Positions 21,104 to 60,052 of a DNA stretch of 64,000 nt are shown in pieces. The stretch is from Utricularia gibba. Taxonomy: Eukaryota; Plantae; Magnoliophyta. The notes under the pieces are model-generated. The model saw nothing but the letters and a program-made list of their open reading frames with translations. It was not told the DNA's origin and searched no databases. A program made the position numbers and the translations under genes. The stretch spans positions 3,968,001-4,032,000 of the forward strand of contig CM007990.1 in the NCBI GenBank assembly GCA_002189035.1, read 5' to 3'. The stretch's first letter is position 1. Each line of letters begins with the position of its first letter.

Positions 21104-21523
21104 TCATATGGTATTCCAATCATACATCTTTTTGCCTCTCTGAAATGGAGCATGCGCTAAATATATCCCATCATCTGCTGCAAGCCAAATCTGGTAATTT
21201 GGATTGCTGTCCAGGTTCTCATTATAAGCATTAAATTTTTGGGTCTTGTTGCCCCACCATATATGACAAAAGAATTTCGTAGTTGGAATGAAATTCAAGC
21301 AGAACTTCCACTTGAAATAATCATTGAATTTTAGAAGCATATGATATCCAAGATCATCATCTTTCGAAAAACAATGTACCTTCATCGGAATGGCGTCGGA
21401 AGAAACATTTCGATCAACGACCACTGTTATTTTTTCCTCGATAAAGCGAGGTAGACATGCTTCAAGGGGGTTGCATTTTATGAGAAGAAGAAATAATAAA
21501 ATGACAAGAGGAGTAGTGCTCAT
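21104..21523 (-). CDS. SPH: S-protein homologue (self-incompatibility S1 family), subfamily A1, secreted, 139 aa
   Basis: Intronless ORF with a signal peptide and the motifs VHCFSKDDDLG, WKFC, FFCHIWWG, W-x4-DDGIYL and YDW. TATA-like element ~45 bp upstream. Confidence 0.92.
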   Translation of the reverse strand: MSTTPLVILLFLLLIKCNPLEACLPRFIEEKITVVVDRNVSSDAIPMKVHCFSKDDDLGYHMLLKFNDYFKWKFCLNFIPTTKFFCHIWWGNKTQKFNAYNENLDSNPNYQIWLAADDGIYLAHAPFQRGKKMYDWNTI

Positions 21524-21796
21524 GCTTGTGTGGTTTCATTCATTCATGCTCTTGGTGCTCTTTTTATAAGGGTTGCTTTAATATCAATTGTTTGTTTTTT
21601 TTAATATACGGCTAATGCTAATAATTCTCTTTCACTTTGTTGACTGAAATGGTAAATGGGCAGTTTTTTTTTGAAGTTGACCAAACTTTACCACATTAAT
21701 TAGAATTTGTCATATTGAATCTCTAGTTTAAAGTCACAAGAATGATAAATGGAACAAACCCAAGCAACAAGAATTAAGGAAAACATGAAGTTTGAG

Positions 21797-22225
21797 TAGG
21801 GAATTGGATGTAATTAGAATCAAATTTGTTTAAGAATCGATAAATTGAAATCGATAATAATAATTCGAGTATAGATAAAAAAAAAATTATACTTCGGATT
21901 TGGGTTTAAATTCTTATAAGCCGTTTATTCGAATAAGAATTGGATATTTTTTATTTTTATATAAATATTTTTTATAATACTAATTATGTAATATATTATA
22001 TATTTATGAACAAATATATATATATTATTTAAAATTGACAATATAAATTTATTATTTATATATCAAAAAATAAAATAAAATTTAGATTTGTGATGATATC
22101 AATATTTGAAATCAGATAAACCGATTAAAAATCGAAATTGATAATTTGCATAAAAACCGATTAATAGAATATTCGATCCAATATCAATAAGAACTGGAAT
22201 TGAACCCAATCTACGAAGATCTCTA
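21797..22225. mobile_element. hAT-type MITE
   Basis: Perfect 8-bp TSD AGTTTGAG at 21789-21796 and 22226-22233. Termini TAGGGA.../...TCTCTA, with internal AACCGA/AATCGA-type subterminal repeats. Confidence 0.8.
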
Positions 22226-22514
22226 AGTTTGAGACTCTAAATATCTATTTTTTTTTCTTATGGCCTATCGAGGGACTAGGTAATTACCAAGCAAATGGCG
22301 TAGTTATGCAAATATAAAACTTGAAGTGGGGATTATGCAACCCTTGTATGAGCATCAATGTCATTCATTTATTTAAAAGAAAAGCTATCGTTATATGACT
22401 ATTCATATGCATGGCTGGAAGCTGGCATGCCGCATGCGGGATAAGACACGAAGATCACATTGCATATATATAAATTTAGTGTGACGGTTTGTATGTCTAG
22501 ATTTGGTATTGAAG

Positions 22515-25844: not shown

Positions 25845-26258
25845 TCATGTCTCCCAATCAAACACCTTGTTGTCATCAACATATGGATCACGATGCGACA
25901 GATAGATCCCATCATCCTTTGTTATCCAAACGTTTATTCTGTGGTTGGGAAAGAAATGCTCATGAAATGCCTTAAAAGCCTTGCTCTTATCTCCCCACCA
26001 AATGTGACAAAAGAACTCTGCCATGGGGAAAAGATTCAAGCAGAAATCCCACTTGAGGTAGTCGTGCGATTTTCGAAGCATATGGGTATCAATATCATCA
26101 TCGCCGGAAAAGCAATGCACCTTCATCGGGATCGCATCCGATGACACGTTACGAACGACGAGAACAATGACTTTAGCGTTCAAGAAACACGCCTCAAGAG
26201 GGTTGCATTTCATGAGAAGAAGAAACAGCAAACCGACTAAGGAGTTATTACTGCTCAT
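25845..26258 (-). CDS. SPH: S-protein homologue, subfamily A2, secreted, 137 aa
   Basis: Intronless ORF with a signal peptide and VHCFSGDDDID, WDFC, FFCHIWWG, WITKDDGIYL, FDW. Confidence 0.92.
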   Translation of the reverse strand: MSSNNSLVGLLFLLLMKCNPLEACFLNAKVIVLVVRNVSSDAIPMKVHCFSGDDDIDTHMLRKSHDYLKWDFCLNLFPMAEFFCHIWWGDKSKAFKAFHEHFFPNHRINVWITKDDGIYLSHRDPYVDDNKVFDWET

Positions 26259-27404
26259 TGTGGTGTGGGAGTGGAACCCCTCAGCTACCTCTTGATGTTC
26301 TTATAGACGTACATTAATTACTTCATACTCACAGATGCTTCAAAATCATGGAGAGTTGCAGAACTTTTTCTCCAAGAAAATAAGGTTTTACTTCAATTTA
26401 CATATAATACAAGATCCTCAGTAGTTCTTTCCACATGCGAATGACATTCAATCAACTCCACTGATATCGAATTTATTTGTTAGAGTGGCTTTTAAATGCA
26501 GCATACCAATGTAGGCTTTTATATTATTTTCGATTGACTATATATGTTTTTTGTCGTATATATTAAGACAAAGAATTAATATTGAAATCAAATATATATA
26601 TATATATATATATAATATTACAAAATTACAAAATGACCAATTTCTAAATGATTACATGTGTGTGTGTGTCTGTCTTGTCTTAAACCCAATCGGGGTGGTC
26701 TTCATTGTTTGTGCATGTATAATTTATGCATAAGTTTCAAAGCATATCACATTTATTTAATAAAATTAATACTTTGTGACATTTATTTTTTATAATAACC
26801 AATAGGGCCATAATTTCAATTTCTCTAAACCATTTTTCATTTGCAATTCGATACAAAAATTATTAACTTATGTGTTCCAAAATTAATATTGAATTAACGT
26901 AATTCATCAAGAAAACCTTATAACATGCACAATCTAAATCTCCATAACGTGCAAACCCAAAATCTTCAAACAAAAAATAAATCATCCGCATCTTCCATAA
27001 TCCATACGTTAATTTCATCAAGATTATCACGATATAAAGATTCAAGACCTTCATTTTCCGCAAATCATTTAAATGGTTTGAACTTCAAAGACATTCATTG
27101 AAAAGACAACTCATAACCCCAAAAGTATGTTAATTCAACAAAATCTTATCCAATTCTAAAGAAACACGGTGTGTAAGAGCATGGGGACTAAAAGACCCAT
27201 GATTTCACTGGTCACGTGGGGTTTTGGGTGTGATTCTCAGCTTTGGAGAATCTTGAGTCGTTACTCATCTTTAATCGCTTAGTTTTAATGTGATCGTCAT
27301 GAATGATTGTCATGACTGGGGAGGGCTATTATTCTAAGTATGGTGAATTATTGTCTTCATTTCTCTACCATCTTATTCATTATAAAACATAGTGATATGA
27401 ATCA

Positions 27405-27809
27405 CTACTCCCAATCATACACCTTCTTGGCATCGGAATAAGGATCGTCGTGAGACAAATAGATGCCATCATCTTTTGTCACCCAAACGTTAAGCAAATA
27501 GTTGATTAGAACTTCGTGAAATGCCCTAAACTTCTTTTGCTTCTTTCCCCACCAGACGTTACAGTAGAAACTGGTAACCCCCACGCCGCTCATGCAGAAC
27601 TCCCATTTGAACCCATCGTGCAGTTTCAGAAGCGTGTGAATACCCAAATCGTCATCACCGGAAAAGCAGTGCGCTTGCATCGGGATCGCATCTGAAGAAA
27701 CGTTCCGAACGATGGACACAGTCGCTTTGGAGCTTAGGAAACATGCTTTAAGAGTGCTGCATGTGGTCAGAAGAAATAAGAAGAAGACGAGCAGGGAGTT
27801 GTTGCTCAT
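27405..27809 (-). CDS. SPH: S-protein homologue, subfamily B, secreted, 134 aa
   Basis: Intronless ORF with a signal peptide and AHCFSGDDDLG, WEFC, FYCNVWWG, WVTKDDGIYL, YDWE. Confidence 0.92.
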   Translation of the reverse strand: MSNNSLLVFFLFLLTTCSTLKACFLSSKATVSIVRNVSSDAIPMQAHCFSGDDDLGIHTLLKLHDGFKWEFCMSGVGVTSFYCNVWWGKKQKKFRAFHEVLINYLLNVWVTKDDGIYLSHDDPYSDAKKVYDWE

Positions 27810-28372
27810 CGTTTGAGGTTTCCGTTGAGGACTCCGAGCTATCAGGACTCCTCTTATACCTCTTTTGGCTTTCCATTTAATTAAATGGTCTTAACAGATC
27901 CTCGAACTTGGAAAATGTAACCAACAAAAAATTGTTATGCAATTTTTGCAAATGCATGTTCTTTTGATTCCATGTGAAATTTCAGTTTTCTGATTCATCC
28001 CAAAAAACTTCTGAAATCTCTTCAAAATATAATCATTTTGAATGCAAGATGCCTAAACATTTATTTACTTTAAGTGAATTTAATGGCAATTTACATGGAA
28101 AATTTTCATTACTTACATAATATTCACTTTAATCGATTAAATTACTCAATAAGGTAGTCAAATAATTTCTTTTCGACATTTTTTTAATACAGATATGGAT
28201 TGTGTAGTTATACAACATATCTTATAGAAATAATGCTTTATTTTCCAACTTATTCGAATGGAAAAAATGCATCAACTCATCACATATAAATGTAAAATGC
28301 ATTACAATAAACAATTTTGAGGATGCATGTTGAAGAAATTTCGTTGCTTTTTAATATTTGATATGAGTATGT

Positions 28373-29369
28373 TTGTAAGGATATAATTATCATATTTATG
28401 GGGAAATTTGTAAAAATGCCCCCAATAGTTTACACATATGAGCAAAAATGACTCAAAAGTTTACTATGGTACAACTTTACCCCTAAAGTTCATATGCAGA
28501 TGCAATATTGACTCCAAATGTTTGCAAAAGGTTTTAATATGTTACATATCTTTGAGAAATATAGGTGCAAAAATGTTCTAACTTCTGTCAAATTTTTAAA
28601 TGTATATTTTTATCTCAAATATTTCAAAGTGTACACTTTTGCCCCATACTACTTTTTTTTATTATTACTAATATTAATATAATAATAAAAGTAATAATAA
28701 TAATAATTTTATTGTACAAAAACCCGAAACACTATCTGAAATTCTAAACTCTTGATAAACCTTTAAACTCAAACCAAAGTGAAAAAAAAAAAATTTGCAT
28801 CTTACTACGAGTTTTAGTATGATGATAATGATTAAAATCATAAATTGAGATAAAAACATTAATCAAAATGAATGAAAAATGGTTAAGAATTTATTTCATA
28901 GACAACCAAAGATGGTTAACAATTTATCTCATCATCATACTCAAACTCGTGTAATAAGATACAAAATTTATATTTTTTTCTATTTGGTTTAGGTTTAAGG
29001 GTTTTAACAAGACTTTAGATTTTCAGATTTTCGTACAATAAAATTATTATGATTATTAGTTATATTAATAATAAGTAATAACAATAAACCAGAATTGGGC
29101 AAAAGTTCACACTCTTAAATATTTGGGGGTAAAAATACACATTTAAAACTTTGATGGAAGTTAGGACATTTTCGTGTTGTTAAAAATAATTGGGCACAAA
29201 AATATATTTTTCATATATATATGACATATTAAAATGTTTTTGCAAATATTTGGGGTATTGTTACATATGTGTGAACGTTTGGGACAAATTTATGCCACAG
29301 TAAACTTTTGGGATAAAAAAACTTGTGTGTGTAAATAGTTGGTGATAAAAATAAACTTGATCTGATATT
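28373..29369. mobile_element. Foldback / long-TIR (Mutator-like) non-autonomous element, ~1 kb
   Basis: Inverted arms of ~450 bp (~28400-28845 vs ~28925-29350), e.g. TTACTACGAGTTTTAGTATGATGAT vs ATCATCATACTCAAACTCGTGTAA. The element is absent at the paralogous site upstream of B' (~39070) and the junctions share TATGT. Confidence 0.75.
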
Positions 29370-31235
29370 TATGTGCTTTTTTTTAGCATAATCCTAAATT
29401 TAGAGAAAATATTATGCAACCAACAAAATAGGGAGGTTTCCATATTTTATAAGGATCCTGACCCTAAAAAACAATTTCAAGAACTCTCTTATAGTTTTAG
29501 GACTCAACAATATTAGCCTTGGGCATGAGTACGAGTTAACTCCAGTAACTCATGAGTTTGTGGAATGAGTGACTTCTAATCATAATCATAGGAGGTAAAT
29601 CAACCAATTCTCAAATGTTACTCATGAATGAATTCAATTCTGATTTTATACTTTCTTTTCATTTCTTGGAATTTAATAAAGATATTGCCTCATCATAAAT
29701 TCTTGTCACAAACAGTTTTCAAAATTCTTCTTCATTTTCCTATCTTCTCAAATGGATTTAAAATCACAACAAGTGACCATAGATGATTTTCAAATAGTAA
29801 GAATAAATCATTGTTGTTTGAGAATCAATTATATCATGTTGATTGCCGTTTCTACAATAATTTTTTTTTAAAAAAAATTAAAATGTAAAACAAAAAGGGT
29901 GTAACTGAATATCGATCACATGGAGTTAATTTTTAAGAGAATGATGCAGTTTAAAACCTAATATAAACTATCACGATTTTGTAAATGAGATTATAAAGGT
30001 AAACAGAAAAAACAAATTTAAATGATGAATCTTAAGCAAGATTACTGTTGGATTGGAATCCTTACCAATTATCATTATAACTCTATCCCTCTTCGGTTTT
30101 TTTGGGGTATATGAACACAAATCACCTATGCTCTCTTATACTCTCTTATAAGAAAACATGAGAATTGTCTCATGTAGCACCTTTTTGGATGATCGTAAAG
30201 ATAAGAGATCCAAACATCAATTATCTTCATGATCGAATTGGCCATATGCGTCCAAGTGTTGCCAATGGTTCTATTGTGGTTGGATACACTCACAAACAAA
30301 ACGTTCTCTCCTTCGAACTGAAAAGGTAGGAGTTGGTGTCTTTCAGCTTGTTCATTTTGAAAACTTGTAAGTAGCAACGAATTACTCATGAATTTTGACT
30401 AGAGATCATTATACTGCAATGCATGTACATTGAAATATGTGAAAGCCGATTGAATTCAGAGAGAAAATGCATAATTAATCATACGATATAGAAGAAGTCT
30501 GTTAACCCAGAAAAGAGAAGTTTAGTTGCAAGCGGTCAAACACAATATGAAACTCAAAGCAAACTAGAGAAAAAAATGGAGAAAAACATTTTAGAGAAAT
30601 GTGAATTACAAAAACTAAAACACCAAATATTATCCTTATCTAAATATTGAAAATACATATTTCGAAGGGGATCTTATTTTTTGGTAGTATTGTCACGTTT
30701 TTCAACCAGTTATCATGCATATTCTCCAATAATGCACTTCAATTCAATTATACTAATATAAGAAAAAACTTATAATTCTTATTCTAGACATCAAATTATA
30801 CTACTCTAATTTCATTTAAACATACACTATGACACAAAATATGATATTAAAATAACAATTAGCATGTCACTTGGAAAACTAGTGGAAATTATGTAACTAA
30901 TTTTTTTAGGTGATCTCCATAGCCAACCAGATAAGAATTGCAGTGTATTTTCAATTTTTTAAATACATTATGAAGAATGATTTGAATTTAAAAATTATAA
31001 GCATAATCATATTTTAAAAAAAGTATTTGCGATGTATATAAATGTGATATAAAATTATTAGTAATTATGTTACATATATGATTTTCATTTTTTTGTGAAT
31101 GGTGTAATTTTTCCACTTAATCACATTCAATTTGAAAACCAAATTTAATATAGGCATAGTATCAAAGTTTCAATATTATTTAACGAATCAAGCACTCACC
31201 AACCATATTGTTAGTGGATGTGACAATTTCTTCTG

Positions 31236-31667
31236 TCAAATACCAACATTATAAGGTGGTGTATTTTCATTCCAACCATATTGCCATGCTGGAGAATCAT
31301 CACCATACCATAAGTAGATTCCATCATCTTTTGCTTCCCAGAAGAATCTTAAAGGAGCAACACCCATATCTTCCTTAAATGCGTTGAAAATAACACTCTT
31401 CTTTCCCCACCATATATGACAAATGAATTTCGTAGTAGGAAGAAAATTTACGCAAAATTTCCAACTAACATAGCTACGAAACACAGGGAGTTGGTGGTAT
31501 CCAAGATTGCCATCTTTTGAAAAGCAATGCACCCTCATCATCGTCGAATCCGAAGACACCATACGAGTAATGGAGATGATTTCCTCCTCAGTAAAGATAC
31601 ATGCTTGAATGGGGCTGCATATTGCAATAAGAACAAATAAGAGTATGGTTGGGAGACCGTTGCCCAT
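31236..31667 (-). CDS. SPH: S-protein homologue, subfamily C1, secreted, 143 aa
   Basis: The likely start is MGNGL at 31667, because the TATA-like element at ~31705 lies inside the longer computed ORF. SPH motifs VHCFSKDGNLG, FICHIWWG, WEAKDDGIYL; C-terminal tail NENTPPYNVGI. Confidence 0.92.
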   Translation of the reverse strand: MGNGLPTILLFVLIAICSPIQACIFTEEEIISITRMVSSDSTMMRVHCFSKDGNLGYHQLPVFRSYVSWKFCVNFLPTTKFICHIWWGKKSVIFNAFKEDMGVAPLRFFWEAKDDGIYLWYGDDSPAWQYGWNENTPPYNVGI

Positions 31668-32159
31668 TGTGTTGAGGTGTCCATTGAGGTTTTCAGGAGA
31701 TGCTCTTCTTATAGGAGTCTTACAAATCAAGTTGGCAATTGCTAACTTGACAACTTCCATAAGTTAGCACATTTTATAGGTAATTTGAGAGAATTAGGTC
31801 TCAATTCAAATTAAAGGTGCAATTGTATTAAGTTAAATTTATCCAAATCCTATAAAAAAAACCAACCTAAATCATCAAATTAAACTAATGAAATGAATAC
31901 AAAGAGTGAAATGTAATAATAATAGAAAAAATAGTTAATAATACAATTTCATTCTTAACTTATGAACATCAGAATTACCTAATAATATTTGCGGCTATAA
32001 GAGTTGAGTTCACATTAATTTTAAACTGAAAAAGAAAAGAATTCATATTTTATCAATTTCAAGACAAGATTTTTTTTTGAATTATTTAAACTAAAAAAAG
32101 GATTCATACTGATTTATAGATGAAATATGAGTCAACAATGAAGCCATATTAAATATGAA

Positions 32160-32445
32160 TTTATACAAGGACATATTTATTAAATAGATGTGATTTGGGT
32201 TATTATGAATGTATACAAGGGTATATTTATTAAATGGATGTGAATTTTGGTTATTATGAATATATACAAAGGTAAATTTATTAAATAGATGTGAATTTTG
32301 GTTATTCTAAATAGATATAAAGGTAAATTTATTAAATAGATGTGAATTTTGATTATTATAAATTAGCATCAAGGAAAATTATTTGAAACTTGATTATTAT
32401 GAATCTAGACAAGGGAAAATTTATTAAATATAAGTGAAATTTGGT
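32160..32445. repeat. ~51-bp AT-rich minisatellite, ~6 units
   Basis: Repeating AAATTTATTAAATAGATGTGAATTTTGGTTATTATGAAT... core; same family as the 42.9 kb and 53.2 kb arrays. Confidence 0.85.
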
Positions 32446-33248
32446 ATTATGTAATTTGAAAATGTACATAAAGTTGGGGATTCGAAAGATCGGATAGGTT
32501 TCGGTTGCACTAAGCCTGAAACTAAACAGCTTTACAATACCCAAAATTTCAAACTTAAACTCAAATTTTAGCAATATTTTGTACACAATTTCATTTTTTT
32601 ATATATAAAATTAATAATTTTTTAGAATACTGATTTCTCGGATGAAGAAAAATCAAATTCCCATTTTTTAAAATAACACTAAAATGAATAAATCATAATG
32701 TTAATTCTTGTTTGTTCTAATTTTAACAAAAATTTTTTTTAATAATGTTTCTGTTATTTTTTCTTTTCTATGTTAATTCTTTTTTTTTCCTTTTTATTAG
32801 TGTTAGCTTATACGATTCTAGGTAATAAAATAATGATGGCATTTCTTACGAAAATAATTCAAAATGAGATTTGCGCAAACATGGGGCAAGGTCATGGTAG
32901 TATATGACATTGAAAATGTATACTATTAAATAATTTAATGGACTTATACTCTATGAGTGTGTTTGGTAGAGAGGATAAAGGGGGATAGTTAAATGGAAAA
33001 AGAAAAATAGTATGTTTAGTAGATGAGATAAATTATACTTAATATAATTTATACCATGAATATGAAATAAAATAATGGAAGGAGAGGGATTGAGATAAAA
33101 TTATATTATCATATACCCCTCCTTTATATACCAACTCTTATTTCTGGTATAATTTATCTATGTACCAAATACAATCTATGTTCTCTGTAAGTATGCAAGG
33201 GGTATAAACATAAATTAGTAGCAATTATTAAGAACATACATTATTTGA

Positions 33249-33668
33249 TCAAAATATAATATTATAAGGTGGTATACCTTCATTCCAACCATATGCTCTC
33301 AATAAGGCATCATTACCATGTCCTAAATAAAACTCGTAATCTTTAACTTCTCAATAGTCTTTGAAAGGAGTCATTTTAATACTCTTGATGTGAATTAAAC
33401 TTAAGACTCTTCTTTCCCCACCAAAAATGATGAAAAAGCTTGAAAAAAAGTTGAAACAAAAAGTTCGACTATAAGTAATATGCAATATTGGGAGTAGGTG
33501 ATATCCAAGGTCATTATCCTTGGAAAATCAGTACACCCTCATCACTGTTGAATTCAATGAAAACTTACAAAAGACTGCAACATATTGCTCTTCAGTCACA
33601 CAAGCTTTATTAGGGTTGTGTAGTGCAAGAAGAACAACTAGGAAGATGGGTATGAGATTGTTGCTCAT
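33249..33668 (-). pseudogene. SPH subfamily D pseudogene
   Basis: MSNNLIPIFLVVLLALHNPNKACVTEEQY... is followed by a stop at the VHC motif (VY*) and a 1-nt frameshift. Downstream DNA still matches DNDLGYH, WWGKK and the PPY tail. Confidence 0.85.
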
Positions 33669-35138
33669 TGCATTATGGTCTGTATTCATGATTTTAGCCA
33701 ATGCTCTTCTTATAAGAGTTTGGTAAACCAAAAAAATGAGTAATCTCTTTCTCTCTAGAAGCAATAAACTAAAGTAGGTATTTACCATTCAATGGTTTTG
33801 AGTCATTTTCAATTGATTTGAACAATGAACATGTATTACATGGATCTTTGAGAAGTGGCAATTTATGTTTTTTTGCTGACACACTAAAGTTGTAAATTAA
33901 TATTTATATTACTTTTTGCACACATATGTTAGAAAACTACTTTCTAAATAACCATACATTTTACAAGCATAGATATTACTAACATTAAACCCCAAATGAG
34001 GGTGTGCACTTAGTCCCTTCATGAGGCAAATAGTCAACTTAAAATAATGGGGAAAGCATTAAAATAGAGGGAATCATTGTTGTAATTTTTTATGAATATC
34101 GGAGACCATTAACATCAAATACCCAATGTATTATATAAAAATTATGTGTTTCAAATTTAATATTGAATTAACATAATTCATCATGACTATGGAAAAACAA
34201 ACCATTTCCAATATATAGAATAGAAAAATTTAGTTATTACCATAAAGTCCAACTATGAAAAATTAATGTGATTTACAAATAATATGATAATAGTACTGTC
34301 TAAATAAATCAAACTTCAATATTTTGATTAGATATACAAATAAAAAATTTCATATGTTATGAATACTCGAAGTAAATATTAAATAAAATTATGAGTTATA
34401 GTTATTCAGGTAACATCAAATAGGAAACATGATGTTTTGAATTTAGATATCAAATGGGGATCTCAAATCGGAATAGCATACAATTATCTTTATAACCCGA
34501 TATAATCCATCGCTTATTTTGTGCTAGGAAGTGCTGAGAAAATCCTCAACAATCTGATGTTATTAGTGAAGAAGAAGAAAAAACCTAAAAAGAAAGCATG
34601 GAATAGAAATAGGAACTCAATTTGAACTATGGCCATTTAAATATAGATTTGATTCAAAGAAAATTCAATATGAAGAAAAGATTCAGGAGCAGAATTCTAG
34701 CTTACAACCAAGACACTGGCAAAAAACCCACAATTTTAAACTCTCAATGAGAATATAACAGTTGTATAGCTTTATTATATACAAATAGGAGAAACATACA
34801 TGCAGATCTGTAGATTAAAAATTATTTTTCTCCATAAAATTATTTTTGGAGGATAAAACTTCAAGTTCATAAGGTTCAATGTCCAGGCTCCAAGATAGGA
34901 ATGTATAATCTTAAATCAGTTCATTTTGTTGGTAGGTTGGGGCGATCACGGCAGCCCAGGTCCAAAATAAAATTTTTTTTTTTTTAATTTTGCATATGTA
35001 TTTTTTTATGTTTTTAATATTATGGTGCAAATTATCAACAAAATAGTACTAATATATCTTTCAATTAACCAAACAATATATCAAATAAGTTGTATCATAA
35101 GTCTATTAAGATTAAATGAGAAATAACATCATTGTTGT

Positions 35139-36997: not shown

Positions 36998-38149
36998 ATT
37001 GTGTTCTTTGTTTAACAAGAAAGCAGCACAACCAAAGCGTGAAATTCATGAATTTCATTTGTCTATAAGTTCATATCTTTATCTTGGTTTAACCTTGAAA
37101 TTTCAATAAAAATTAATGATAAACTTAAATCATATATTTATGTAATAAGATGAACAATGTTTAAAAAGAAAACCTTGATGCATGTATATATATATGTACA
37201 TTCTCATGTCTTTTGTCTAGTGTATCAAAAAATAGATTATTTTCATCATTCATAATCCATATGTTAATTTCATCAAGATCAAGATATAAAGGTTCAAAAC
37301 CTTCGTTTTGCACAATTCATTTAAATGGTCTGAATGTCACAAACGTTCATCGAAAGGCAAAACTTTTAACCCTGAAAATAAGTTAATGCAATGAAATCTC
37401 TCAACATTCAGACACATGGTGTGCAAGAGCATGGGATTAAAAGAGCCACCACTTCACCTGTCTCGTAGGGTTTTGGATGTGATTCTCAACATTAGAGAAT
37501 CTTGAGTCCTTACTCATTCTTTATCGCTTAGCTCAGTTTTAATGTGATCTTTTTCACTGATTGTCGTGACATGGGTGTGGCTATTATTCAAAGTATCTGG
37601 GTTATTGTCCTAATTTCCATGCCATCTTATTCATTAGGCCTCATGGGGTCATTATCTCTCTTTATGCAAAATTGTAAAAATAATACCTTAAGTTGTCAAA
37701 ACCGTGAAACAAATATCCAATAGTTTTCAAAATTTGTTAAAAAGAATTAGTTTACACTGCCATGAATGAGGTTTGCTTTCAAAACCACCGAAATTTAATG
37801 TTAGGATTTTTGCATTCGTGTCTAAAATTCAACAAATCGAATGATACTTCTGTTAATGTTATATACAATTTTATGCGTTCAAGGCAAACTATTTAAAAAA
37901 AATACATTAAGAGGTGTATAATACAATTTTAAAACTTAATGGTGAATCTATTTATACTGATTGTAAGTTCAAGTGCTAGGCAAACTACACCCCTTCCATA
38001 TTTCTCTAGATTTAACCTTTTGACTTCTACTAGGCAATGTCGAGACATTCAGGGCCAAATGGTCGAAGAATGACCATCCTGAACCCCTAGTTTGATCGGA
38101 ATTTTTTGTTGAATTTTATTCAATAAAAAAAACATAATATTATGGATCA

Positions 38150-38554
38150 CTACTCCCAATCATACACCTTTTTGGCATTGGAATAAGGATCGTTGTGAGA
38201 CAAATAGATGCCATCATCTTTTGTCACCCAAACGTTAAGCAAATAGTTGATTAGAACTTCGTGAAATGCCCTAAACTTCTTTTGCTTCTTTCCCCACCAG
38301 ACGTTACAGTAGAAACTGGTAACCCCCACGCCGCTCATGCAGAACTCCCATTTGAACCCATCGTGCAGTTTCAGAAGCGTGTGAGTCCCCAAATCGTCAT
38401 CACCGGAAAAGCAGTGCGCTTGCATCGGGATCGCATCTGAAGAAACGTTCCGAACGATGGACACAGTCGCTTTGGAGCTTAAGAAACATGCTTCAAGAGT
38501 GCTGCATGTTGTCAGAAGAAATAAGAAGAAGACGAGCAGGGAGTTGTTGCTCAT
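38150..38554 (-). CDS. SPH: S-protein homologue, subfamily B' (near-identical to 27405-27809), 134 aa
   Basis: Start MSNNSLL at 38554; 8 nucleotide and 4 amino-acid differences from copy B by manual comparison. Confidence 0.92.
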   Translation of the reverse strand: MSNNSLLVFFLFLLTTCSTLEACFLSSKATVSIVRNVSSDAIPMQAHCFSGDDDLGTHTLLKLHDGFKWEFCMSGVGVTSFYCNVWWGKKQKKFRAFHEVLINYLLNVWVTKDDGIYLSHNDPYSNAKKVYDWE

Positions 38555-42283: not shown

Positions 42284-42715
42284 TCAAAGACCAACATCAT
42301 AAGGCGGTATATTTGCATTCCAATCATATACCCATGTTGGAGAATCATTACCATGCCCTAGATAGATTCCATCATCTCTTGCTTCCCAGAAGAATCTTAG
42401 AGGAGCACGAGTCAAAGTTTCCTTATATGCGTTGAACCTAATGCTCTTATTTCCCCACCATATATGACAAATGAAATTTGTAGTAGGAAGAAAATTTACG
42501 CAAAATCTCCAACTAAAATTACTATGCATCACAGGGAGTTGGTGGTATCCAAGATCGTCATCTTTTGAAAAGCAATGCACCCTCATCATCGTTGAATCCG
42601 AAGACACCATACGAGTAACGGTGATGACTTCTTCCTCAGTAATGAAACATGCCTGAAGGGGATTGCATATAGCAAGAACAACAATTAAGAGGACGGTTGG
42701 AAGATTGTTGTGCAT
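42284..42715 (-). CDS. SPH: S-protein homologue, subfamily C2, secreted, 143 aa
   Basis: Intronless ORF with VHCFSKDDDLG, FICHIWWG, WEARDDGIYL and tail NANIPPYDVGL. Confidence 0.92.
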   Translation of the reverse strand: MHNNLPTVLLIVVLAICNPLQACFITEEEVITVTRMVSSDSTMMRVHCFSKDDDLGYHQLPVMHSNFSWRFCVNFLPTTNFICHIWWGNKSIRFNAYKETLTRAPLRFFWEARDDGIYLGHGNDSPTWVYDWNANIPPYDVGL

Positions 42716-42889
42716 TATGCTGAAATTGTATTGAAGGTTTAGGGGATGCTCTTTTTATAGGAGTCTTAGAAATCAAGTTGGGAATTGTTGACTTGGATAA
42801 TTTTCATAAATTAGCATATTTTGTTGTTAATTTAAGAGAATTAGGTTAACAATGATGATGCCACATTACATAAGATTTTCATATGAATT

Positions 42890-43370
42890 ATACACAGACA
42901 AATTTATTAAATAGATGTGAATTTTTGTTATTATGAAGTGGCAAATTTATTAAATATATGTAAATTTTGGTTATTATGAATTAATGCATGGGTATATTTA
43001 TTACATTGATGTGAATTTTGGTTATTATAAATTGATACAAGGGTAAATTTATTAAATAGATGTGAATTTTTGATATTATGAAGGGGAAAATTTATTAAAT
43101 ATATGTAAATTTTGGTTATTATGAATTAATGCATGGGTATATTTATTAAATTGATGTGAATTTTGGTTATTATAAATTGATACAAGGGTAAATTTATTAA
43201 ATAGATGTGAATTTTTGTTATTATGAATTGATAAAAGGATAAATTTATTAAATAGATTTGAATTTTTGTTATTATGAATTAATATAAGGACAAATTTATT
43301 AAAGTAAATGTGAATTTGGTTATTATGAATTGATATAAGGGTAAATTTATTAAATACATGTGAAATTTGG
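42890..43370. repeat. 51-bp minisatellite, 10 units, containing a duplicated 145-bp higher-order unit
   Basis: Core starts at 42901, 42944, 42995, 43046, 43089, 43140, 43191, 43242, 43293 and ~43344 (spacings 43, 51, 51, 43, 51, 51, 51, 51, 51). Confidence 0.9.
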
Positions 43371-43860
43371 TAGGATTCAAAAATTGGATTGGTTTGGATT
43401 GCACTAAGCCTGAAATAACTAAAAAAGTTTATAATACCCACAATTTTTCAATTTAAACTGAAATATTAGCTATATTTTACACATATTTTTCATTTTTAAA
43501 TAATTCATGATGTTAATTCTTGCTTCTTTTTTTTCTTTTCTATTTTAGTTCATTTTTTTCCATTTTCTTATTTTTGGCTTCTTATATTCTAGATAATAAT
43601 GATGGCATTTTTATAAAAACACTCCCAAATGAGATTTGTGCAAACATGGGGCAAGGTCATGGTAGTAAATGATATTGAAAATTTATATTAATAAATAATT
43701 AAATTTTCCTTCATTAGATATGTATTTTATTACTTTATTAAAATAAAAATTGATACTTTATGTTATTTTAAATTTTTAAATGACTTATACTCTATGCTTT
43801 ATATAAATATACAATAGGTAAACATAAATTAGTAGCAATTATTAAGAACATGCATTATTG

Positions 43861-44288
43861 GATTAAAATACAATATCATAAGGTGATACATTTTTATTTC
43901 AACCATATGTTGTCAATGGGGTATCATTACCTTTTACTAAATAAAATCTATCATCTCTAACTTCTCAATAGTTTTTCAAATGAGTTATTTTCATACACCC
44001 TTATATGTATTAAACTTATGACTCTTCGTTCCGCACCACAAATGATAAAAGGAACTTATAGTAGAAAAAAAGTTAAGACAAAAAGTCCAACTATAAGTAA
44101 TATGGAATACCGGGAGCAGATGATATCCAAGATCATCATCTTTGGCAAAATGCACACCTGCATCATTGTTGAATTCGATGAAACCATATGAGTAATCGCA
44201 ACATATTGTTCCGTGGTCACAGAAGTTTGAACAAGGTTTCACATTGCAAGAAAAACAATGAGCAATAAGGTATGAGATTGTCATTCAT
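43861..44288 (-). pseudogene. SPH subfamily D' pseudogene
   Basis: Frameshifted signal peptide and loss of the Cys in VHC (VHFAKDDDLGYHLLPVFHITYSWTFCLNFF...HLWCG), then a stop. Homologous to 33249-33668. Confidence 0.85.
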
Positions 44289-44750
44289 GGCATTAAGGTA
44301 TGTATTGAGGATTGTAAAAGATACTCTTTTTATAAGAGCTTGGTAAATTAAAAAATGAGTATCTCTTTCTTTTTAAGAAAGCAATAAACTATAAAGTGGG
44401 TATCACCATTCAATGGTTTCGAGTCATTTTCATTAATTTGAACAATGAGTTTGTAATACATAGATTTTTGAAAAGTGACAATTTATACTTTTTTTGTTCA
44501 CACATTAAAGTTACAATTAATATTGATAGTACTTACTTTTTACATGTATATGTTAGAATATTACTATATAAATAATCATATATTTTACAAGTATGCATAT
44601 TACTTATATTAAACCCCAAATGAGGGTGTCACTTAGCCTGTGAATGGGACAATGATCAAATTAAAACGATTTGATTCAGCCTAGTTTAACTAAATTAATT
44701 TTGTAAACGTTTATACATAAAATTTGTATCTCATTTCTAGCAATCATTAT

Positions 44751-47505: not shown

Positions 47506-48016
47506 GGTATATTATAGGTTTTAACAAAACTGCTTATTTGAAATTCAATTAAGAAAACTTGCCTAACCTAGGATAAAAAATTGGTACAACTGTTTTAGTT
47601 AAATAGTTAGACAATTCAGAGTTTAGACAATGAAGTTTGTAGAGCTTTTGCCGTTAAAATTTTTCTATTAAACCAATTAGTAGATTAACTTGAATCTATC
47701 AACATAGTTCAATTAACTCGCACCATTATTATGCATTCATAGTAAGGTTTTGTTTGTAGAGTTTCATTCGACTTCTAACTCCATCTTCTGTAGAATCTCT
47801 CGGTCAAGATACTATACCAGCTCCCACGTTTTCTCTTCTCTGGTACCATTCTCATTAGCCTAACCATGTAAATATTACAATATAATGCATTTAGAACAAT
47901 TTGACAAAAAATATGGAAATATGTTTCTTGTGACAAGAAGAAATCGATATACGCTCATTGTGTGAGTTAATAAAAATTGCTTAAAACTCTTAAATTGTAA
48001 AGAAAGGCTTTAAATT

Positions 48017-48292
48017 GTTTTTTCGAAAGACGATGATCTTTGATATCACTCTCTCCGAGTTGTACACTATGTTGCTTGGAGATTTTGTGTGATTTTTTTC
48101 CCTACAACAAGTTTCTTTTGTCATATATGGTGGGGAAAGAAGAGTATCAAGTTCAATGCATATCAAGATCATTTTTAGTGTGGTCCTTTCTTGTTCAGAT
48201 TCACATGTGAAAACAGTAAGAAAATATAAAGAAAGCCAGTTTAGGAAAGGCAGACATTGGATCAAGATTAACGTTCAAGCTGGAATATATAT
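48017..48292 (+). pseudogene. SPH subfamily E pseudogene, 5'-deleted
   Basis: FSKDDDL*YH...FPTTSFFCHIWWGKKSIKFNAYQDHF*. The start codon and signal peptide are missing and there is a ~60-bp insertion near the 3' end. Confidence 0.85.
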
Positions 48293-52283: not shown

Positions 52284-52715
52284 TCAAACACCAATATCAT
52301 AAGGTGGTATATTTTCATTCCAACCATACATCCATGCTGGAAATTCATCACCGTGCCCTAAATAGATTCCATCATCTCTTGCTTCCCAAAAGAATCTTGA
52401 AGGAGCACGAACCATATTTTCCTTATATGCGTTGAACCTAATACTCTTCTTTCCCCACCATATATGACAAATGAAATTCGTAGTAGGAAGAAGATTTACG
52501 CAAAAACTCCAACTAATATGGCTACGAAAAACAGGGAGCTGGTGGTATCCAAGATCGTTATCTTTTGAAAAGCAATGCACCCTCATCATCGTCGAATCTG
52601 AAGACACCATACGGGTAACAAAGATGAATTCTTCCTTAGTAAAGACACATGCTTGAAGGGAGATGCATGATGTAAGAAGAACAACTAAGATGATGGTTGG
52701 AAGATTGTTGCCCAT
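52284..52715 (-). CDS. SPH: S-protein homologue, subfamily C3, secreted, 143 aa
   Basis: Likely start MGNNL at 52715 (TATA-like element at ~52755). SPH motifs are intact; tail NENIPPYDIGV. Confidence 0.92.
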   Translation of the reverse strand: MGNNLPTIILVVLLTSCISLQACVFTKEEFIFVTRMVSSDSTMMRVHCFSKDNDLGYHQLPVFRSHISWSFCVNLLPTTNFICHIWWGKKSIRFNAYKENMVRAPSRFFWEARDDGIYLGHGDEFPAWMYGWNENIPPYDIGV

Positions 52716-54913: not shown

Positions 54914-56486
54914 ATGTGGAAAAATAATTTCCTTGTCATCTTGTTGTTTGATGTTCTAATGAGATGCAATCCTCTTTAGGCCTGTATAACCAATGAAGTT
55001 TACTTCAATATTATATGCATGGTAACCTCAATTCAACCATGATGATAATGCATTAATTTTCAAAAGATGATGATCTTGGATACCACCATCTCTCCCAGTT
55101 GTATGATATGTTTGATTGGCGATTTTCTGTGAACTTTTTCCCTACAACGAGTTTCTTTTGTCATATATGGTGGGGAAAGAAGAGTATTGGGTTTAATGCA
55201 TATCATGAGCACTTTCAGCATGGTCCTTTGAAACGTCATTGGAGAGCTAAAGATGATAGAATATATTTTTTATAACACATATTTTCGAGTATTTTAAGTA
55301 TAGAAAAATGACTCATATTTTACTTCAAAACTCAACTTTATTATATATTTTCTATGTTTTTATGACTAATATTGTAGTTGCATCTTTTATTCTTAGTTGG
55401 GACTAAATCATACAACCTTAGTTCTAATGGTTTTCTTGAGCAATGTAGCGGTTTGCTAGTGGCCCAATTCCCTAGGAGCCGAAGAAGGAAGTACAACCAA
55501 ATCCCAAGGAAGAAAAAAGGGATTTTAGGAAATGATGAGAGAGAGAAGAGGAGAGAGGGACCCTTGAACAATAAGCCACAAAGAATTCTGAGGAGCTAAG
55601 AAGAAAAATCACAATAACACACGGGAGTGCGAGGAGGAAGATCTAGAAAAACAAGCTTCCTTTCGAAAATTTCTTACGCTCTCGAAGAACACTAGTCCTA
55701 ACTGAGAACAGTTCTAGCTTTACTGCATTAACAATTTACCATTTCTATGTTTATTATACCCTATTTGTTGTTGTTTAACTTCGAGAACAAAATGTTACTT
55801 AAGATATGTTATGAAAACACTTTTTTCACCCTTATCATAAGTAGTTAAAGCACCTAGTAGTGCCTTGGGAAAAGGGGTAAACAAGATTGTTGTTCACTAA
55901 ACCACATTAATCAAATATCACATTATTTCCTTACAAACCAAGATAGATCCAAAATGGTAAGTACTGAAACTCACTAAAATAACTCTAACTAGAGGTAGAA
56001 CAAAAATTATGGAAAACAAAGGTTTGGATAGACTTAAATCTCTACTTATTATGTGAATGATCTATTATCTAGGTGGGATAGTTGTAGCAAATTACATGTT
56101 AACCCTCAGACTCTCAAGGCACCACCCATCTCATCTTAGGAACAACCGAGTTCAAAAGTTTGTTACTTTTCTCTATTAGATTTTATCCTAAATCTGTTTT
56201 AGTCTTAGTTTAGACTAAATCTATCAACATGCCATTGATTGCATGCATTGATACTCATATGACAAACACCTACTCTTCGTTTTGACCCTAATCACTATGC
56301 TCACAATTATATTATGTTTGAATGTTTATTAGATTTATAAATTTTATTTGATAGAAGAATTTTCAATTCTAACAACGTTGCAAAAATTTTTCATTTATAA
56401 ATTTTAGACATGAATGCAAAGATATCTTAAGAAAGATGTATGGTTGGAATGAAAATATACCACCTTATCCTAATATTATTTTTTAA
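54914..56486 (+). pseudogene. SPH subfamily E' pseudogene interrupted by a solo LTR
   Basis: ATG at 54914, premature TAG at 54977-54979 and a frameshift near 55030. The coding sequence stops at 55269 and resumes at 56401 (…RHECKDILRKMYGWNENIPPYPNIIF*). Confidence 0.88.
55270..56400. mobile_element. Solo LTR (1131 bp) inside the SPH E' coding region
   Basis: Eroded TGATAA...TTATCA termini (TTATAAC...TTTATAA) and 5-bp TSD ATTTT. Reverse-complement similarity to 46339-47505 and 58.6-59.28 kb. Confidence 0.82.
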
Positions 56487-56840: not shown

Positions 56841-56893
56841 AAGAAGAAGAAGAAGAAGAAGAAGAAGAAAAAGAAGAAGAAGAAGAAGAAGAA
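56841..56893. repeat. (GAA)n microsatellite
   Basis: ~17 GAA units with one interruption; a shorter homologous tract lies at ~60399-60422. Confidence 0.9.
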
Positions 56894-57029
56894 AATGAAT
56901 AGAAATAATAACATACAACTTTTATTTTGATAAAACCTAGGGTCTCAAAAATTTCTTGAGTTTGGGTCATCTCCCAACTTGTAAGAATGTATAATGTAGC
57001 ATCTAAGTATAATACTAAAATATTACAAC

Positions 57030-59276
57030 TCACACACTACACGATAAATAATTACCTAATATCACTACATTAGTTATTCTTCACAAAGCACATACATAAT
57101 TTCCTCTTCCCATGCTATCTATAGTCACTCCCATGCTTTATGCTAACAATATGCCACATCTTTATAGAAGTCAAATAGTGCTGCAATCCAATAGTTGTAG
57201 CCAAATTCGCTAGTCCTCCAACATTTAAATTATATGGCTTAGCTTTTTGGTAACTTGACTTGAAGGCTGTACGAGGTTGTTTTTCAAAAAATACATCTTT
57301 CAAAGCCTCTGCAAGGATCTATGAGAGTTTTACTTACTAGCTTACTAATTCTAACTGCTAATAAATGCGACATTATCTTATGCCACATATCGTATATTTT
57401 AATATTATTTGTTATAGTATTTAGCACTTGTACCTCATATCTCATCCCTATTTTTGTATAGTACAACAACCAGGTGACTTTTTGACTCCTATCATGGAGC
57501 CTCGAATTAACTTTCAACCTTCGATGCCAAGACTATATCAATAACCTTGAATATCTAGCTCCCCTACTAGAGATAAATTCATTATAAAAAATGATGTTAT
57601 ATGTTGAAGACTCTTATATTTCAACTATACCGTCATATTGGTGATCACACATGGATTTCCAATCCTAAATATTTCTTTTGTATATAATGGTTTTCCATTT
57701 TAACTTTACTAGAACTACACTTTTGATAGTTAACCATACATGTCTCAATAGATGTAGTATGTAACAAAACTATTGAATCTGCGAACCAATCATTCACTAG
57801 GTTAACTTCTTCTATCTCAACTGTTAATAAAACCAACAAGTTATTATCATCAAGACTCATATAGGTAGAGATATTTTTGTCTATTGTATCTTTTGGTTTT
57901 CACTCCTTATTCTACTCTTGTTGAGATTATTTGTAGGCTTGGCAGTTCTTCCATAAATGACTTTTGTCCCATAGTAAAAGCATAATTAAGATTCATAATT
58001 TTTCATGTATACTTGAGTTAGTTTGACACTTAGCTATATTTTTGCTTCCTAGTCATCTTTCTAGATCTTCTTTTATACTTGTTCTCACTATACATTAAAA
58101 TATCTTTTGAATAAAATTCTTTATCAGCTCTTGTAGATTTCAGCCTAAGTTCTTCTTACAATAAAGAAGTTACCACTATCTTGTATTAGTGTTTCCCACG
58201 AATCAAAGATTGTATCTCGAAGTTGTATGACTTGAATCTCATCGTCAAAACTCTTCTTCACTACCATCATTTGATCAAATATATCCTTACCATTGTAGAG
58301 ATGGTCTAACATGGATTTATCATCTTTATATACTTCAAGCTGGACATATGTTTATACAAAGTCAATTTGTTCAATATGTTATCTGACCAAAACATCTCTT
58401 CCAAAGCCTATCACAATAACTATGCATCTTCATATTCAATGATCTATGAGATAAACAGTTATTTATATACAAGTTCATAATAACTAATGATCTATACCAC
58501 TTCGAGGAATATAGGGACTTGAGAAGCTTATGAATCTATGAGAAGCATATGCACTAGCCTAAAGGAATACAGGGACTCGAGAAACTTCTAAATTTGAGAA
58601 GAAAATGTACTTGGGAAGTATTACTATAAAGTCCAACTATCCTTTATTATTTCTCGTATTGGACAAGTATTGTTAATCCCCTTTGCCCTAAGGCACCACT
58701 AGGTGATTAGCTATTCATGATAAGGAAAAGTAAAATACTTTCATAACAAGCATCATTCTGATTTCAAAGTTCAACAACAACAAAAGACACATAACATAAA
58801 CATAAACTATAAATAGTTCACACGAAAAAGATAAAACTACTCCCAACTAGGAGTAATGTCTTCATAAGCCAAAAAAGTCTTCAAAAGTGAGATTGATTCC
58901 TGGTTCTTCTTCTTCATTTTTTCTTGTAAGGTTTTCTCTAGATCTCCTCTCCAAAAATTTGTGACGTGTTGTTCGAAGTCCTGGAGATATTTTCTCTCCC
59001 TCATTATATCCAAAATTCATCTTTTTATCTCTTTGGATTTTGGTGCACTTCCTTTCAATTTTCGTCCACATCTTCTGCAACTTCATTGTTCTCTTTCGGC
59101 TCTTTGAGATTTGGACTGCTAAAACATACTACATTGAGCAAGAGAGTGATTAGAATTAAGATTGAGACTAAATCATGGATTTAATACCAACTAGGAATAA
59201 AAGACACAAACGGTGGTGCTAGTAAAATATTAGTCATTTTTCTATCCTTAAATACTCAAAAATATTTTTTTTATCA
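57030..59276. mobile_element. Degenerate LTR-retrotransposon remnant: decayed internal sequence plus a partial LTR ending TTATCA
   Basis: 58.6-59.28 kb matches the 46.3 and 55.3 kb LTR family. The internal part is repeated at 60.5-60.8 and 62.2-62.6 kb, with weak Gypsy-integrase-like translation on the minus strand. Confidence 0.55.
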
Positions 59277-59614
59277 ATCACCATACTAGCTCCTGCAATT
59301 TTTCTAATGCATCATTCTTGTTAGCCCACTTGTATTAATACTAGAGTAAAATGCATTTATAACAATGTTATTAAGAAAAATTATGGAAATGTACTTTTTA
59401 TGACAAAAAGAAATCTATAGTATGCTCATTTTGTGAGTTAATAAAAATTGCTCAAACTTTTGAATTGTAAAAAAAACCTTTTAATGCTTTTCTACAGTAT
59501 GAGATTCGATTATATAGATTTTTTGGGTATACATTCATGAAAATATTCCAATGTGATTTATGAAACTACTATAACAAGAGCATCTGTAAAGCCCTCATTG
59601 CCAATCTCAACACA

Positions 59615-60052
59615 ATGAGGAAAAATAATTTTCTTGTCATCATGCTGCTTGCTGTTCTAATGGTATGCAATCCTCTTCAAGCTTGTATAACCGATGAAGT
59701 TTACATTGATATTATATGCATGGTGACCTCAAATTCAACCATGATGATAGTACATTGCTTTTCAAAAGATGATGATCTTGGATACCACCATCTCTCCCAG
59801 TTGTATGATATGTTTGATGGGAAATTTTGTGTGAACTTTTTCCCTACAACGAGTTTCTTTTGTCATATATGGTGGGGAAAGAAGAGTATTGGGTTCAATG
59901 CATATCAGGAGCACTTTCAGTATGATCCTTTGGAATATCATTGGAGAGTTAAAGATGATGGAATATATTTTAGACATGAAGGCAAAGATATCCTAAGAAA
60001 GATGTATGGTTGGAATGAAAATGTACCACCTTATCTTAATAGTGTTTTTTAA
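59615..60052 (+). CDS. SPH: S-protein homologue, subfamily E'' (only intact E copy), secreted, 145 aa
   Basis: Intronless ORF with a signal peptide, VHCFSKDDDLG, FFCHIWWG, WRVKDDGIYF and tail NENVPPYLNSVF. Confidence 0.92.
   Translation: MRKNNFLVIMLLAVLMVCNPLQACITDEVYIDIICMVTSNSTMMIVHCFSKDDDLGYHHLSQLYDMFDGKFCVNFFPTTSFFCHIWWGKKSIGFNAYQEHFQYDPLEYHWRVKDDGIYFRHEGKDILRKMYGWNENVPPYLNSVF

What the first reader, a model, noticed from the sequence alone, without database searches (positions are those of the whole stretch)
21104..60052. Twelve-locus, five-subfamily SPH ligand array undergoing birth-and-death evolution
Seen: 8 intact and 4 dead intronless SPH genes in 39 kb. They share a distinctive signature (S-S-D/N-x-x-P/M-M-x-V-H-C-F-S) but the subfamilies are strongly diverged. 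Established: the family includes the Papaver stigma S-determinant PrsS and an SPH gene in the Turnera distyly S-locus; most SPH proteins have no known receptor or function. Inference: a lineage-specific repertoire of secreted recognition ligands (pollen-pistil, species barrier or defence) with haplotype-level copy-number variation. This is the best candidate in the window for an undescribed system. No receptor gene is visible in the window.
Basis: partly seen in the sequence, partly recalled or inferred. Interest (0 to 1): 0.8.

Follow-up and report, generated by a model that had tools for sequence, protein, structure and literature searches.

The report
Tandem array of SPH genes
This is a real cluster of eight working and four dead copies of a well-known plant gene family for small secreted proteins (S-protein homologues); clusters like it, expanding separately in each lineage, are already described, and nothing found here ties this one to mating or defence.

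Summary
Window 21104-60052 carries eight intact intronless genes that match Pfam PF05938 (Self-incomp_S1 / SPH) at E 1e-18 to 1e-23. It also carries four decayed copies, one of them split by a 1.1-kb insertion.

An AlphaFold model of one copy (mean pLDDT 85) best matches the solved Arabidopsis SPH15 structure (6G7G) and predicted Arabidopsis SPH and Papaver S1 structures.

The nearest relatives are nine SPH genes packed into 7 kb of a Genlisea aurea contig (Lamiales). The eight window genes group together apart from them, so the array grew after that split.

Growth included a roughly 7-kb block duplication of three loci, one of which was already dead. One gene pair was later homogenised across its coding region, probably by gene conversion. 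Selection is purifying overall (omega 0.38), tighter in g1/g2/g3/g5 (0.20) and looser in g4/g6/g7/g8 (0.62).

The birth-and-death reading is supported.

Species-specific tandem SPH clusters are published for Turnera and Passiflora. This scan noted another SPH array elsewhere in the same genome (s1-267408). It is an ordinary new member of a known kind.

The parts
21104..21523 (-). g1, intact SPH gene (139 aa). It has the shortest branch and is the copy closest to the Genlisea relatives.
   Evidence: PF05938 E 1.5e-23. Coding sequence identical in a Logan contig from SRR2033663.
25845..26258 (-). g2, intact SPH gene (137 aa)
   Evidence: PF05938 E 2e-18. Sister to g3/g5.
27405..27809 (-). g3, intact SPH gene (134 aa), near-identical partner of g5
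   Evidence: PF05938 E 4.9e-18. 97% aa and 98% nt identity to g5, dS 0.05.
31236..31667 (-). g4, intact SPH gene (143 aa from the conserved ATG; an in-frame upstream ATG lies at 31760)
   Evidence: PF05938 E 6.6e-19; alignment of start regions.
33249..33668 (-). p1, dead SPH copy. TGA replaces the invariant Cys codon (33530) and the invariant Trp codon (33353), and there are several frameshifts.
   Evidence: The TGA at the Trp codon is shared with p2.
38150..38554 (-). g5, intact SPH gene (134 aa from the conserved ATG; an in-frame upstream ATG lies at 38641)
   Evidence: PF05938 E 3.6e-18.
42284..42715 (-). g6, intact SPH gene (143 aa); this is the copy that was modelled
   Evidence: PF05938 E 7e-23. 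AF2 pLDDT 85.4 with nine strands. Best PDB match 6G7G.
43863..44288 (-). p2, dead SPH copy, sister of p1: three TGA codons and several frameshifts
   Evidence: 78% nt identity to p1 over 888 bp.
47978..48217 (+). p3, SPH fragment (central ~80 codons, stops and indels, no signal-peptide region)
52284..52715 (-). g7, intact SPH gene (143 aa from the conserved ATG)
   Evidence: PF05938 E 1e-21. Groups with g4 and g6.
54914..55269 (+). p4, 5' part of a dead copy of the g8 type: 1-nt deletion at 55030, stops at 54977 and 55054
   Evidence: About 90% nt identity to g8.
55270..56396 (.). 1127-bp insertion splitting p4. It is flanked by an imperfect 9-bp direct repeat, has no clear terminal inverted repeats, and parts of it recur elsewhere in the window.
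56397..56486 (+). p4, 3' part (last ~30 codons)
59615..60052 (+). g8, intact SPH gene (145 aa), the only intact copy on the + strand
   Evidence: PF05938 E 2.9e-20.
26971..34044 (.). Block-duplication copy 1, carrying g3, g4 and p1
   Evidence: Colinear blastn pieces to 37226-44666 at offsets of about 10.3-11.1 kb, 75-87% identity.
37226..44666 (.). Block-duplication copy 2, carrying g5, g6 and p2
27410..27860 (.). Tract of 94-100% identity with 38155-38605 (g3/g5 coding sequence plus ~50 bp of leader), set in flanks that are 50-90% identical. Probably a gene-conversion tract.
   Evidence: Sliding identity. dS 0.05, against 0.18 for the co-duplicated g4/g6.
32154..32363 (.). 51-bp minisatellite, 4.1 copies, about 0.5 kb upstream of g4
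42900..43371 (.). The same 51-bp minisatellite, 8.6 copies, upstream of g6

Best explanation
This is a tandem array of S-protein homologue (SPH, Pfam PF05938) genes. Each intact copy is a single exon. It encodes a pre-protein of about 135-145 residues with a hydrophobic N-terminal signal sequence of about 23 residues ending in a small-x-small site just before a Cys. The mature domain is about 110-120 residues, four-cysteine, and forms a beta-sandwich. The array grew by repeated local duplication after the lineage split from the Genlisea lineage. One step copied a roughly 7-kb block holding three loci, one of which was already dead. Copies then took different paths. Four decayed through stops, frameshifts, truncation and an insertion. 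g3 and g5 were re-homogenised over their coding region, most likely by gene conversion. g4, g6 and g7 diverged quickly in protein sequence while keeping every core residue. Shown here: family, fold, copy number, duplication structure, lesions and rates. Inferred from what is known of the family: the products are secreted into the apoplast and act as extracellular binding or signalling proteins, probably in floral tissue. Neither the tissue, the partner nor the phenotype is known.
For: Pfam hits far above cut-off for all eight genes. The AF2 model of g6 (pLDDT 85.4, pTM 0.75, one N-terminal helix plus nine strands) best matches SPH15, PDB 6G7G (TM 0.63/0.77, rmsd 2.7 A over 114 columns). Its top 30 Swiss-Prot model matches are all Arabidopsis SPHs plus Papaver S1. 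A profile search finds 1497 clusters at E<=0.001. The named close hits are annotated 'S-protein homolog'. The Cys pattern (N-terminal C, HC, FC, FxC, without the C-terminal pair) is shared by many family members. Trees put the eight genes in one clade (99/95, 83/87) inside a starred clade otherwise made only of Genlisea aurea genes. Block duplication. p1 and p2 share a TGA at the invariant Trp codon. High-identity tract. Omega by GY94: 0.38 for all eight, 0.20 for g1/g2/g3/g5, 0.62 for g4/g6/g7/g8. Published parallels: PMC9862265, PMC6439154, PMC9856046.
Against: No expression evidence. Pairwise dN/dS of 0.5-1.0 among g4, g6 and g7 also fits relaxed constraint, so some 'intact' copies may be silent or on the way to decay. 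The signal peptide was judged by eye and from the model helix, not with a dedicated predictor. Support for the window genes forming one clade fell below the star threshold in the second tree.
Confidence: 0.85

Rival explanations
1. The array is, or sits in, a mating-recognition locus of the Papaver PrsS or Turnera S-locus kind. Its copies would be highly polymorphic or hemizygous ligands paired with a linked pollen-side partner.
For: Same family and fold as PrsS. Faster protein evolution in g4/g6/g7, including the loop that corresponds to the PrsS specificity loop. SPH proteins occur in Brassicaceae pollen coats.
Against: No partner-like gene was found: no kinase, LRR or multi-pass membrane ORF in 15.5-64 kb. 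The g1 coding sequence is identical in the one independent sample, with only 3 SNPs in 1482 bp. Most plants carry dozens to about 100 SPH genes in clusters with no role in incompatibility. Another SPH array is noted elsewhere in this genome. Omega stays below 1.
Confidence: 0.05
2. The array is largely a graveyard. The eight open frames are kept mainly by youth, and few or none are expressed.
For: Four of twelve loci are dead. dN/dS is 0.8-1.0 for g4 against g6 and g7. No RNA run was listed as holding g2-g4.
Against: g1, g2 and g3/g5 are separated by saturated dS (above 1.4), yet they stay open with omega about 0.2 and all core residues invariant. Truly neutral copies of similar or younger age (p1, p2, p4) have already gathered stops and indels.
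Confidence: 0.1
3. The proteins act in defence, either as membrane-binding or pore-associated proteins or as decoys, rather than in signalling.
For: The SPH15 topology resembles the membrane-binding domain of cholesterol-dependent cytolysins (paper read). Weak fold matches to pneumolysin-type entries appear low in the list. Rapid turnover is typical of defence gene clusters.
Against: Those fold matches have TM below 0.42 and E above 0.02. No SPH has a shown defence role in the papers read.
Confidence: 0.05

Closest known systems
Genlisea aurea SPH cluster on contig KE527372.1 (M569_01930 to M569_01937, annotated 'S-protein homolog')
   Same: Same SPH clade, with a starred branch in both trees. 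Same N-V/I-S-S-D...V-H-C-F-S-G-D-D-D-L-G motif and the same four-Cys pattern. Intronless genes in a dense tandem array, nine in 7 kb.
   Different: No one-to-one orthology: each species' copies group apart. The Genlisea array is about five times denser. Its flank (an Mlo gene) has no match in the window. None of the retrieved Genlisea proteins has the C-terminal N-x-N-x-P-P-Y tail.
Turnera subulata and Passiflora organensis tandem SPH clusters (Henning et al. 2023, PMC9862265)
   Same: Seven and nine neighbouring SPH genes that expanded separately in each species and form species-specific clades. This is the same evolutionary pattern.
   Different: A different eudicot order and a different SPH clade. 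One Turnera paralogue (SPH1) was recruited into the hemizygous distyly S-locus. Nothing comparable is shown here.
Arabidopsis thaliana SPH family, including SPH15 (PDB 6G7G)
   Same: Same Pfam family, size, signal peptide and beta-sandwich fold. A large family of about 92 to over 100 members with no assigned function.
   Different: 18-33% sequence identity. Too distant for phmmer or a profile of the window genes to reach the PDB entry by sequence.
Papaver rhoeas PrsS (stigma S-determinant, Self-incompatibility protein S1)
   Same: Family and predicted fold (TM 0.65).
   Different: 19% identity. PrsS is one highly polymorphic locus tightly linked to PrpS. Here there are many paralogues, no visible partner, and no evidence on polymorphism or stigma expression.

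Membership tests
SPH / Pfam PF05938 (Self-incomp_S1) | Match to the family HMM above the gathering score | tested here: met
   All eight intact ORFs score 66-84 bits against a cut-off of 24. The p2 fragment scores 21 bits, below the cut-off.
SPH / Pfam PF05938 (Self-incomp_S1) | Small single-domain precursor (~130-150 aa) from an intronless gene | tested here: met
   Uninterrupted ORFs of 134-145 codons.
SPH / Pfam PF05938 (Self-incomp_S1) | N-terminal secretion signal | tested here: inconclusive
   There is a hydrophobic stretch at residues ~5-20, modelled as a helix at 5-16, followed by L-x-A then C. No dedicated signal-peptide predictor or secretion assay was available.
SPH / Pfam PF05938 (Self-incomp_S1) | Beta-sandwich of eight or nine strands as in SPH15 | tested here: met
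   AF2 model with nine strands and pLDDT 85. Best PDB match is 6G7G, TM 0.63/0.77.
SPH / Pfam PF05938 (Self-incomp_S1) | Conserved cysteines able to form two disulphides | tested here: met
   Four Cys in the mature part: N-terminal C, H-C, F-C and F-x-C. The two near-universal ones are present. The other two follow a variant pattern seen in many family members instead of the C-terminal pair. Disulphide pairing itself was not tested.
PrsS-type self-incompatibility determinant | Tightly linked pollen-expressed partner gene (PrpS-like small membrane protein) | tested here: not met
   No ORF of at least 80 codons with three or more hydrophobic segments, no kinase motif in a credible ORF, and no Pfam domain in intergenic ORFs within 15.5-64 kb. 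A multi-exon gene, or one outside the window, would be missed.
PrsS-type self-incompatibility determinant | Extreme allelic polymorphism at the locus | tested here: inconclusive
   Only one comparison was possible. The g1 coding sequence is identical and its 3' flank differs at 3 sites in the SRR2033663 contig. The genotype and library type of that run are unknown.
PrsS-type self-incompatibility determinant | Stigma-specific expression and S-specific pollen inhibition | not testable with these tools
   No RNA run was listed as holding g2-g4.
Hemizygous S-locus SPH (Turnera SPH1 type) | Presence in only one haplotype or morph | not testable with these tools
   No DNA reads or second haplotype could be examined.

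The most novel reading that the evidence does not exclude
The fast-evolving g4/g6/g7/g8 group carries a conserved, disordered C-terminal tail (N-x-N-x-P-P-Y). That tail is absent from all 177 other family members retrieved. The group could be a lineage-specific set of polymorphic reproductive recognition ligands, and the tail could be a modification or docking site. That would make this a second, independently recruited SPH-based recognition system outside Papaveraceae.
Probability: 0.04. Interest if true: 0.65.

Novelty: new member of a known kind. Interest (0 to 1): 0.2.

Why it matters
SPH proteins are among the largest plant families of secreted proteins with no assigned function, apart from the poppy stigma determinant. 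Each well-resolved array adds material for finding out what they bind. This array shows in 39 kb the whole repertoire of family turnover: tandem and block duplication, duplication of an already dead copy, gene conversion, relaxed or diversifying change, and decay by point lesions and by an insertion. It does not open a new question. The same pattern is published for other plants, and no link to a phenotype could be tested.

Tried and rejected
1. Expression. The look-up of sequencing runs listed seven RNA runs with the species label, and none held sampled words of 25800-31790. The first attempt found the machine busy.

2. An apparent stop-loss allele of g1. P0001 is longer at both ends. I rejected this because the Logan contig's coding sequence is identical to the window's. 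The extensions come from a gene call that read TGA as Trp.

3. Sequence search of solved structures, with g6 and with a profile of the eight genes: no hit at E<=1. The relation to SPH15 appears only by fold.

4. Synteny. The Genlisea flank and the Phtheirospermum locus share nothing with the window outside the SPH genes.

5. Partner or receptor gene. Pfam on 20 intergenic ORFs gave only a MULE transposase fragment at 18981-19310. A hydrophobicity and kinase-motif scan found nothing credible. Rfam found nothing.

6. A feature-based hint that ORF 22827-23201 is a serine carboxypeptidase relic. Pfam gave no support. Only a P-G-C-S-type motif and an N-P-S-S-W motif were seen. It remains a lead.

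7. Positive selection. Omega does not exceed 1 for any group in the one-ratio codon model. Loop-only pairwise values above 1 rest on very few sites. Site models were not available.
Full report
**What is there.**
- ORF listing and Pfam scanning show eight uninterrupted ORFs of 134-145 codons between 21104 and 60052. Each matches PF05938 (Self-incomp_S1) at 66-84 bits against a curated cut-off of 24.
- Seven lie on the minus strand (g1-g7) and one on the plus strand (g8).
- tblastn with these eight proteins against the whole window finds four further loci and nothing else.
- Nucleotide alignment to the nearest intact copy gives the lesions:
  - p1 (33249-33668) has TGA at the invariant Cys and Trp codons, plus frameshifts.
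  - p2 (43863-44288) has three TGA codons and frameshifts.
  - p3 (47978-48217) is a central fragment without a 5' end.
  - p4 is about 90% identical to g8. It has a 1-nt deletion and stops, and a 1127-bp insertion (55270-56396) bounded by an imperfect 9-bp direct repeat.
- The count of eight intact and four dead is therefore correct.

**Family and fold.**
- The eight proteins share an N-terminal hydrophobic stretch ending in L-x-A followed by Cys.
- Thirty-one columns are invariant, including H-C-F-S, F-C, W-W-G and D-D-G-I-Y.
- An AlphaFold2 model of g6 was built on a 93-sequence alignment. It has mean pLDDT 85.4, one N-terminal helix and nine strands.
- Its best solved match is Arabidopsis SPH15, PDB 6G7G (TM 0.63 by query, 0.77 by target, rmsd 2.7 A).
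- Its thirty best Swiss-Prot model matches are Arabidopsis S-protein homologues and Papaver S1.
- Sequence searches of the PDB found nothing, which reflects how divergent the family is.
- The mature proteins have four cysteines. Two are the near-universal ones. The other two follow a variant pattern (an N-terminal Cys and F-C) that many family members use in place of the C-terminal pair.

**Relatives.**
- A profile of the eight genes finds 1497 representative clusters at E<=0.001 in 1.84 billion proteins.
- The closest named proteins are all from Lamiales and annotated 'S-protein homolog': Genlisea aurea, Phtheirospermum, Striga, Castilleja, Erythranthe and Handroanthus.
- The three best Genlisea hits sit on one 9.8-kb contig. 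That contig carries nine SPH genes in 7 kb next to an Mlo gene.
- Several high-scoring database entries are 250-420-residue models with two or three SPH domains. These are most likely neighbouring copies fused by annotation, in Vaccinium, Striga and Tetracentron. The Phtheirospermum model spans two copies 25 kb apart.
- Tandem SPH arrays are therefore common.

**Phylogeny.**
- In a 62-protein tree the eight window genes form one clade (99/95). It sits inside a clade (100/99) whose other members are all Genlisea aurea genes.
- With more Lamiales sequences added, the window clade is kept at 83/87 and the joint clade at 96/92.
- No window gene pairs with a particular Genlisea gene. The array therefore expanded after that split, as far as current sampling shows.
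- The 12-locus DNA tree gives (g1,(g2,(g3,g5))). The other eight loci form one starred group whose internal order is unresolved: g4, g6 and g7; (p1,p2); and (p3,(g8,p4)).

**How it grew.**
- Self-comparison shows a colinear duplication of 26971-34044 onto 37226-44666, carrying g3-g4-p1 and g5-g6-p2.
- p1 and p2 share a TGA at the same invariant Trp codon. That copy was therefore already dead when the block was copied.
- Non-coding parts of the blocks are 75-87% identical, and p1/p2 are 78% identical.
- g4/g6 have dS 0.18, but g3/g5 have dS 0.05 and 98% identity.
- A sliding comparison puts the 94-100% tract at 27410-27860, which is the coding region plus about 50 bp. Both flanks fall to 50-90%.
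- Local gene conversion explains this best. Very strong constraint on synonymous sites is the alternative.
- This agrees with the earlier first-reader note s1-277560 on the same stretch.

**Selection.**
- A one-ratio codon model gives omega 0.38 for all eight genes, 0.20 for g1/g2/g3/g5 and 0.62 for g4/g6/g7/g8.
- Pairwise values for mature g4/g6/g7 are 0.48-1.04.
- The older copies are clearly under purifying selection: they stay open although their dS is saturated.
- The younger group shows relaxed or partly diversifying change while keeping all core residues.
- Positive selection is not demonstrated.

**Function.**
- Nothing could be learned directly. I worked beside those places afterwards.
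- The only public contig carrying any of the eight proteins is a 1482-bp Logan contig from SRR2033663. It is colinear with 20348-21829 and differs at three sites, all downstream of g1. Whether it is DNA or RNA is unknown.
- No partner gene is visible.
- The papers read state that no SPH other than PrsS has an assigned function. They also report that SPHs are mainly floral and occur in pollen coats, and that tandem clusters expanded separately in Turnera and Passiflora.
- The likeliest role is therefore a secreted extracellular binding or signalling protein. This is an inference from the family, not a result.

**Verdict.** This is a genuine, cleanly resolved SPH tandem array and a new member of a known kind. 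The birth-and-death description is right and can be sharpened: a dead copy was duplicated, and one gene pair underwent conversion. The suggestion of an undescribed recognition system has no support yet. This scan has also noted a 14-gene SPH array on another piece of the same genome (s1-267408; not checked here).

Noticed in passing
window 42284-42325, 31236-31277, 52284-52325 (-) and 60011-60049 (+); relics in p1, p2, p4: g4, g6, g7 and g8 end in a conserved ~10-residue tail (N-x-N-x-P-P-Y-x-x-x) after the last family Trp, and the dead p1, p2 and p4 keep relics of it. The model has it disordered (pLDDT ~48). None of the 177 other family members retrieved has a W...P-P-Y tail. It could be a modification or docking site.
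   Followed up: partly
window 32154-32363 and 42900-43371: A 51-bp minisatellite lies upstream of g4 (4.1 copies) and of its duplicate g6 (8.6 copies). It changed in length after the block duplication and sits in the likely promoter region.
   Followed up: partly
window 22827-23201 (+): This 125-codon ORF lies in a GC-richer stretch between g1 and g2. Its protein-language features resemble serine carboxypeptidase (Peptidase_S10) fragments (score 0.92, 162 shared features), and it has P-G-C-S and N-P-S-S-W motifs. Pfam gives no hit. It may be a decayed SCPL exon.
   Followed up: partly
window 18981-19310 (+): MULE transposase domain fragment (PF10551, E 3.4e-5, just under the cut-off), about 2 kb beyond the g1 end of the array.
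   Followed up: no
window 35654-36670 and 62632-63648: About 1 kb repeated in inverted orientation at 82.5% identity, with no Pfam domain in its ORFs. Probably a non-autonomous mobile element. Other dispersed repeats recur near SPH copies, for example 50289-51139 and 60821-61674.
   Followed up: no
window ~11400-15000 (+) and ~3500-4500 (+): Upstream of the array, several long open frames look by eye like exons of a multi-exon DEAD-box RNA helicase gene and of a membrane-bound O-acyltransferase-like gene. No family search was run on them. They are the nearest non-SPH genes.
   Followed up: no
L001 (Logan contig of SRR2033663) = window 20348-21829: The database protein for g1 (P0001) carries false N- and C-terminal extensions because the gene caller read TGA as Trp on this plant contig. 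This is a caution for other plant proteins in that collection.
   Followed up: yes
window 33530 (p1) and 55054 (p4): In two independent dead copies, the codon of the invariant Cys in H-C-F-S is now a stop (TGA in p1, TAA in p4).
   Followed up: no
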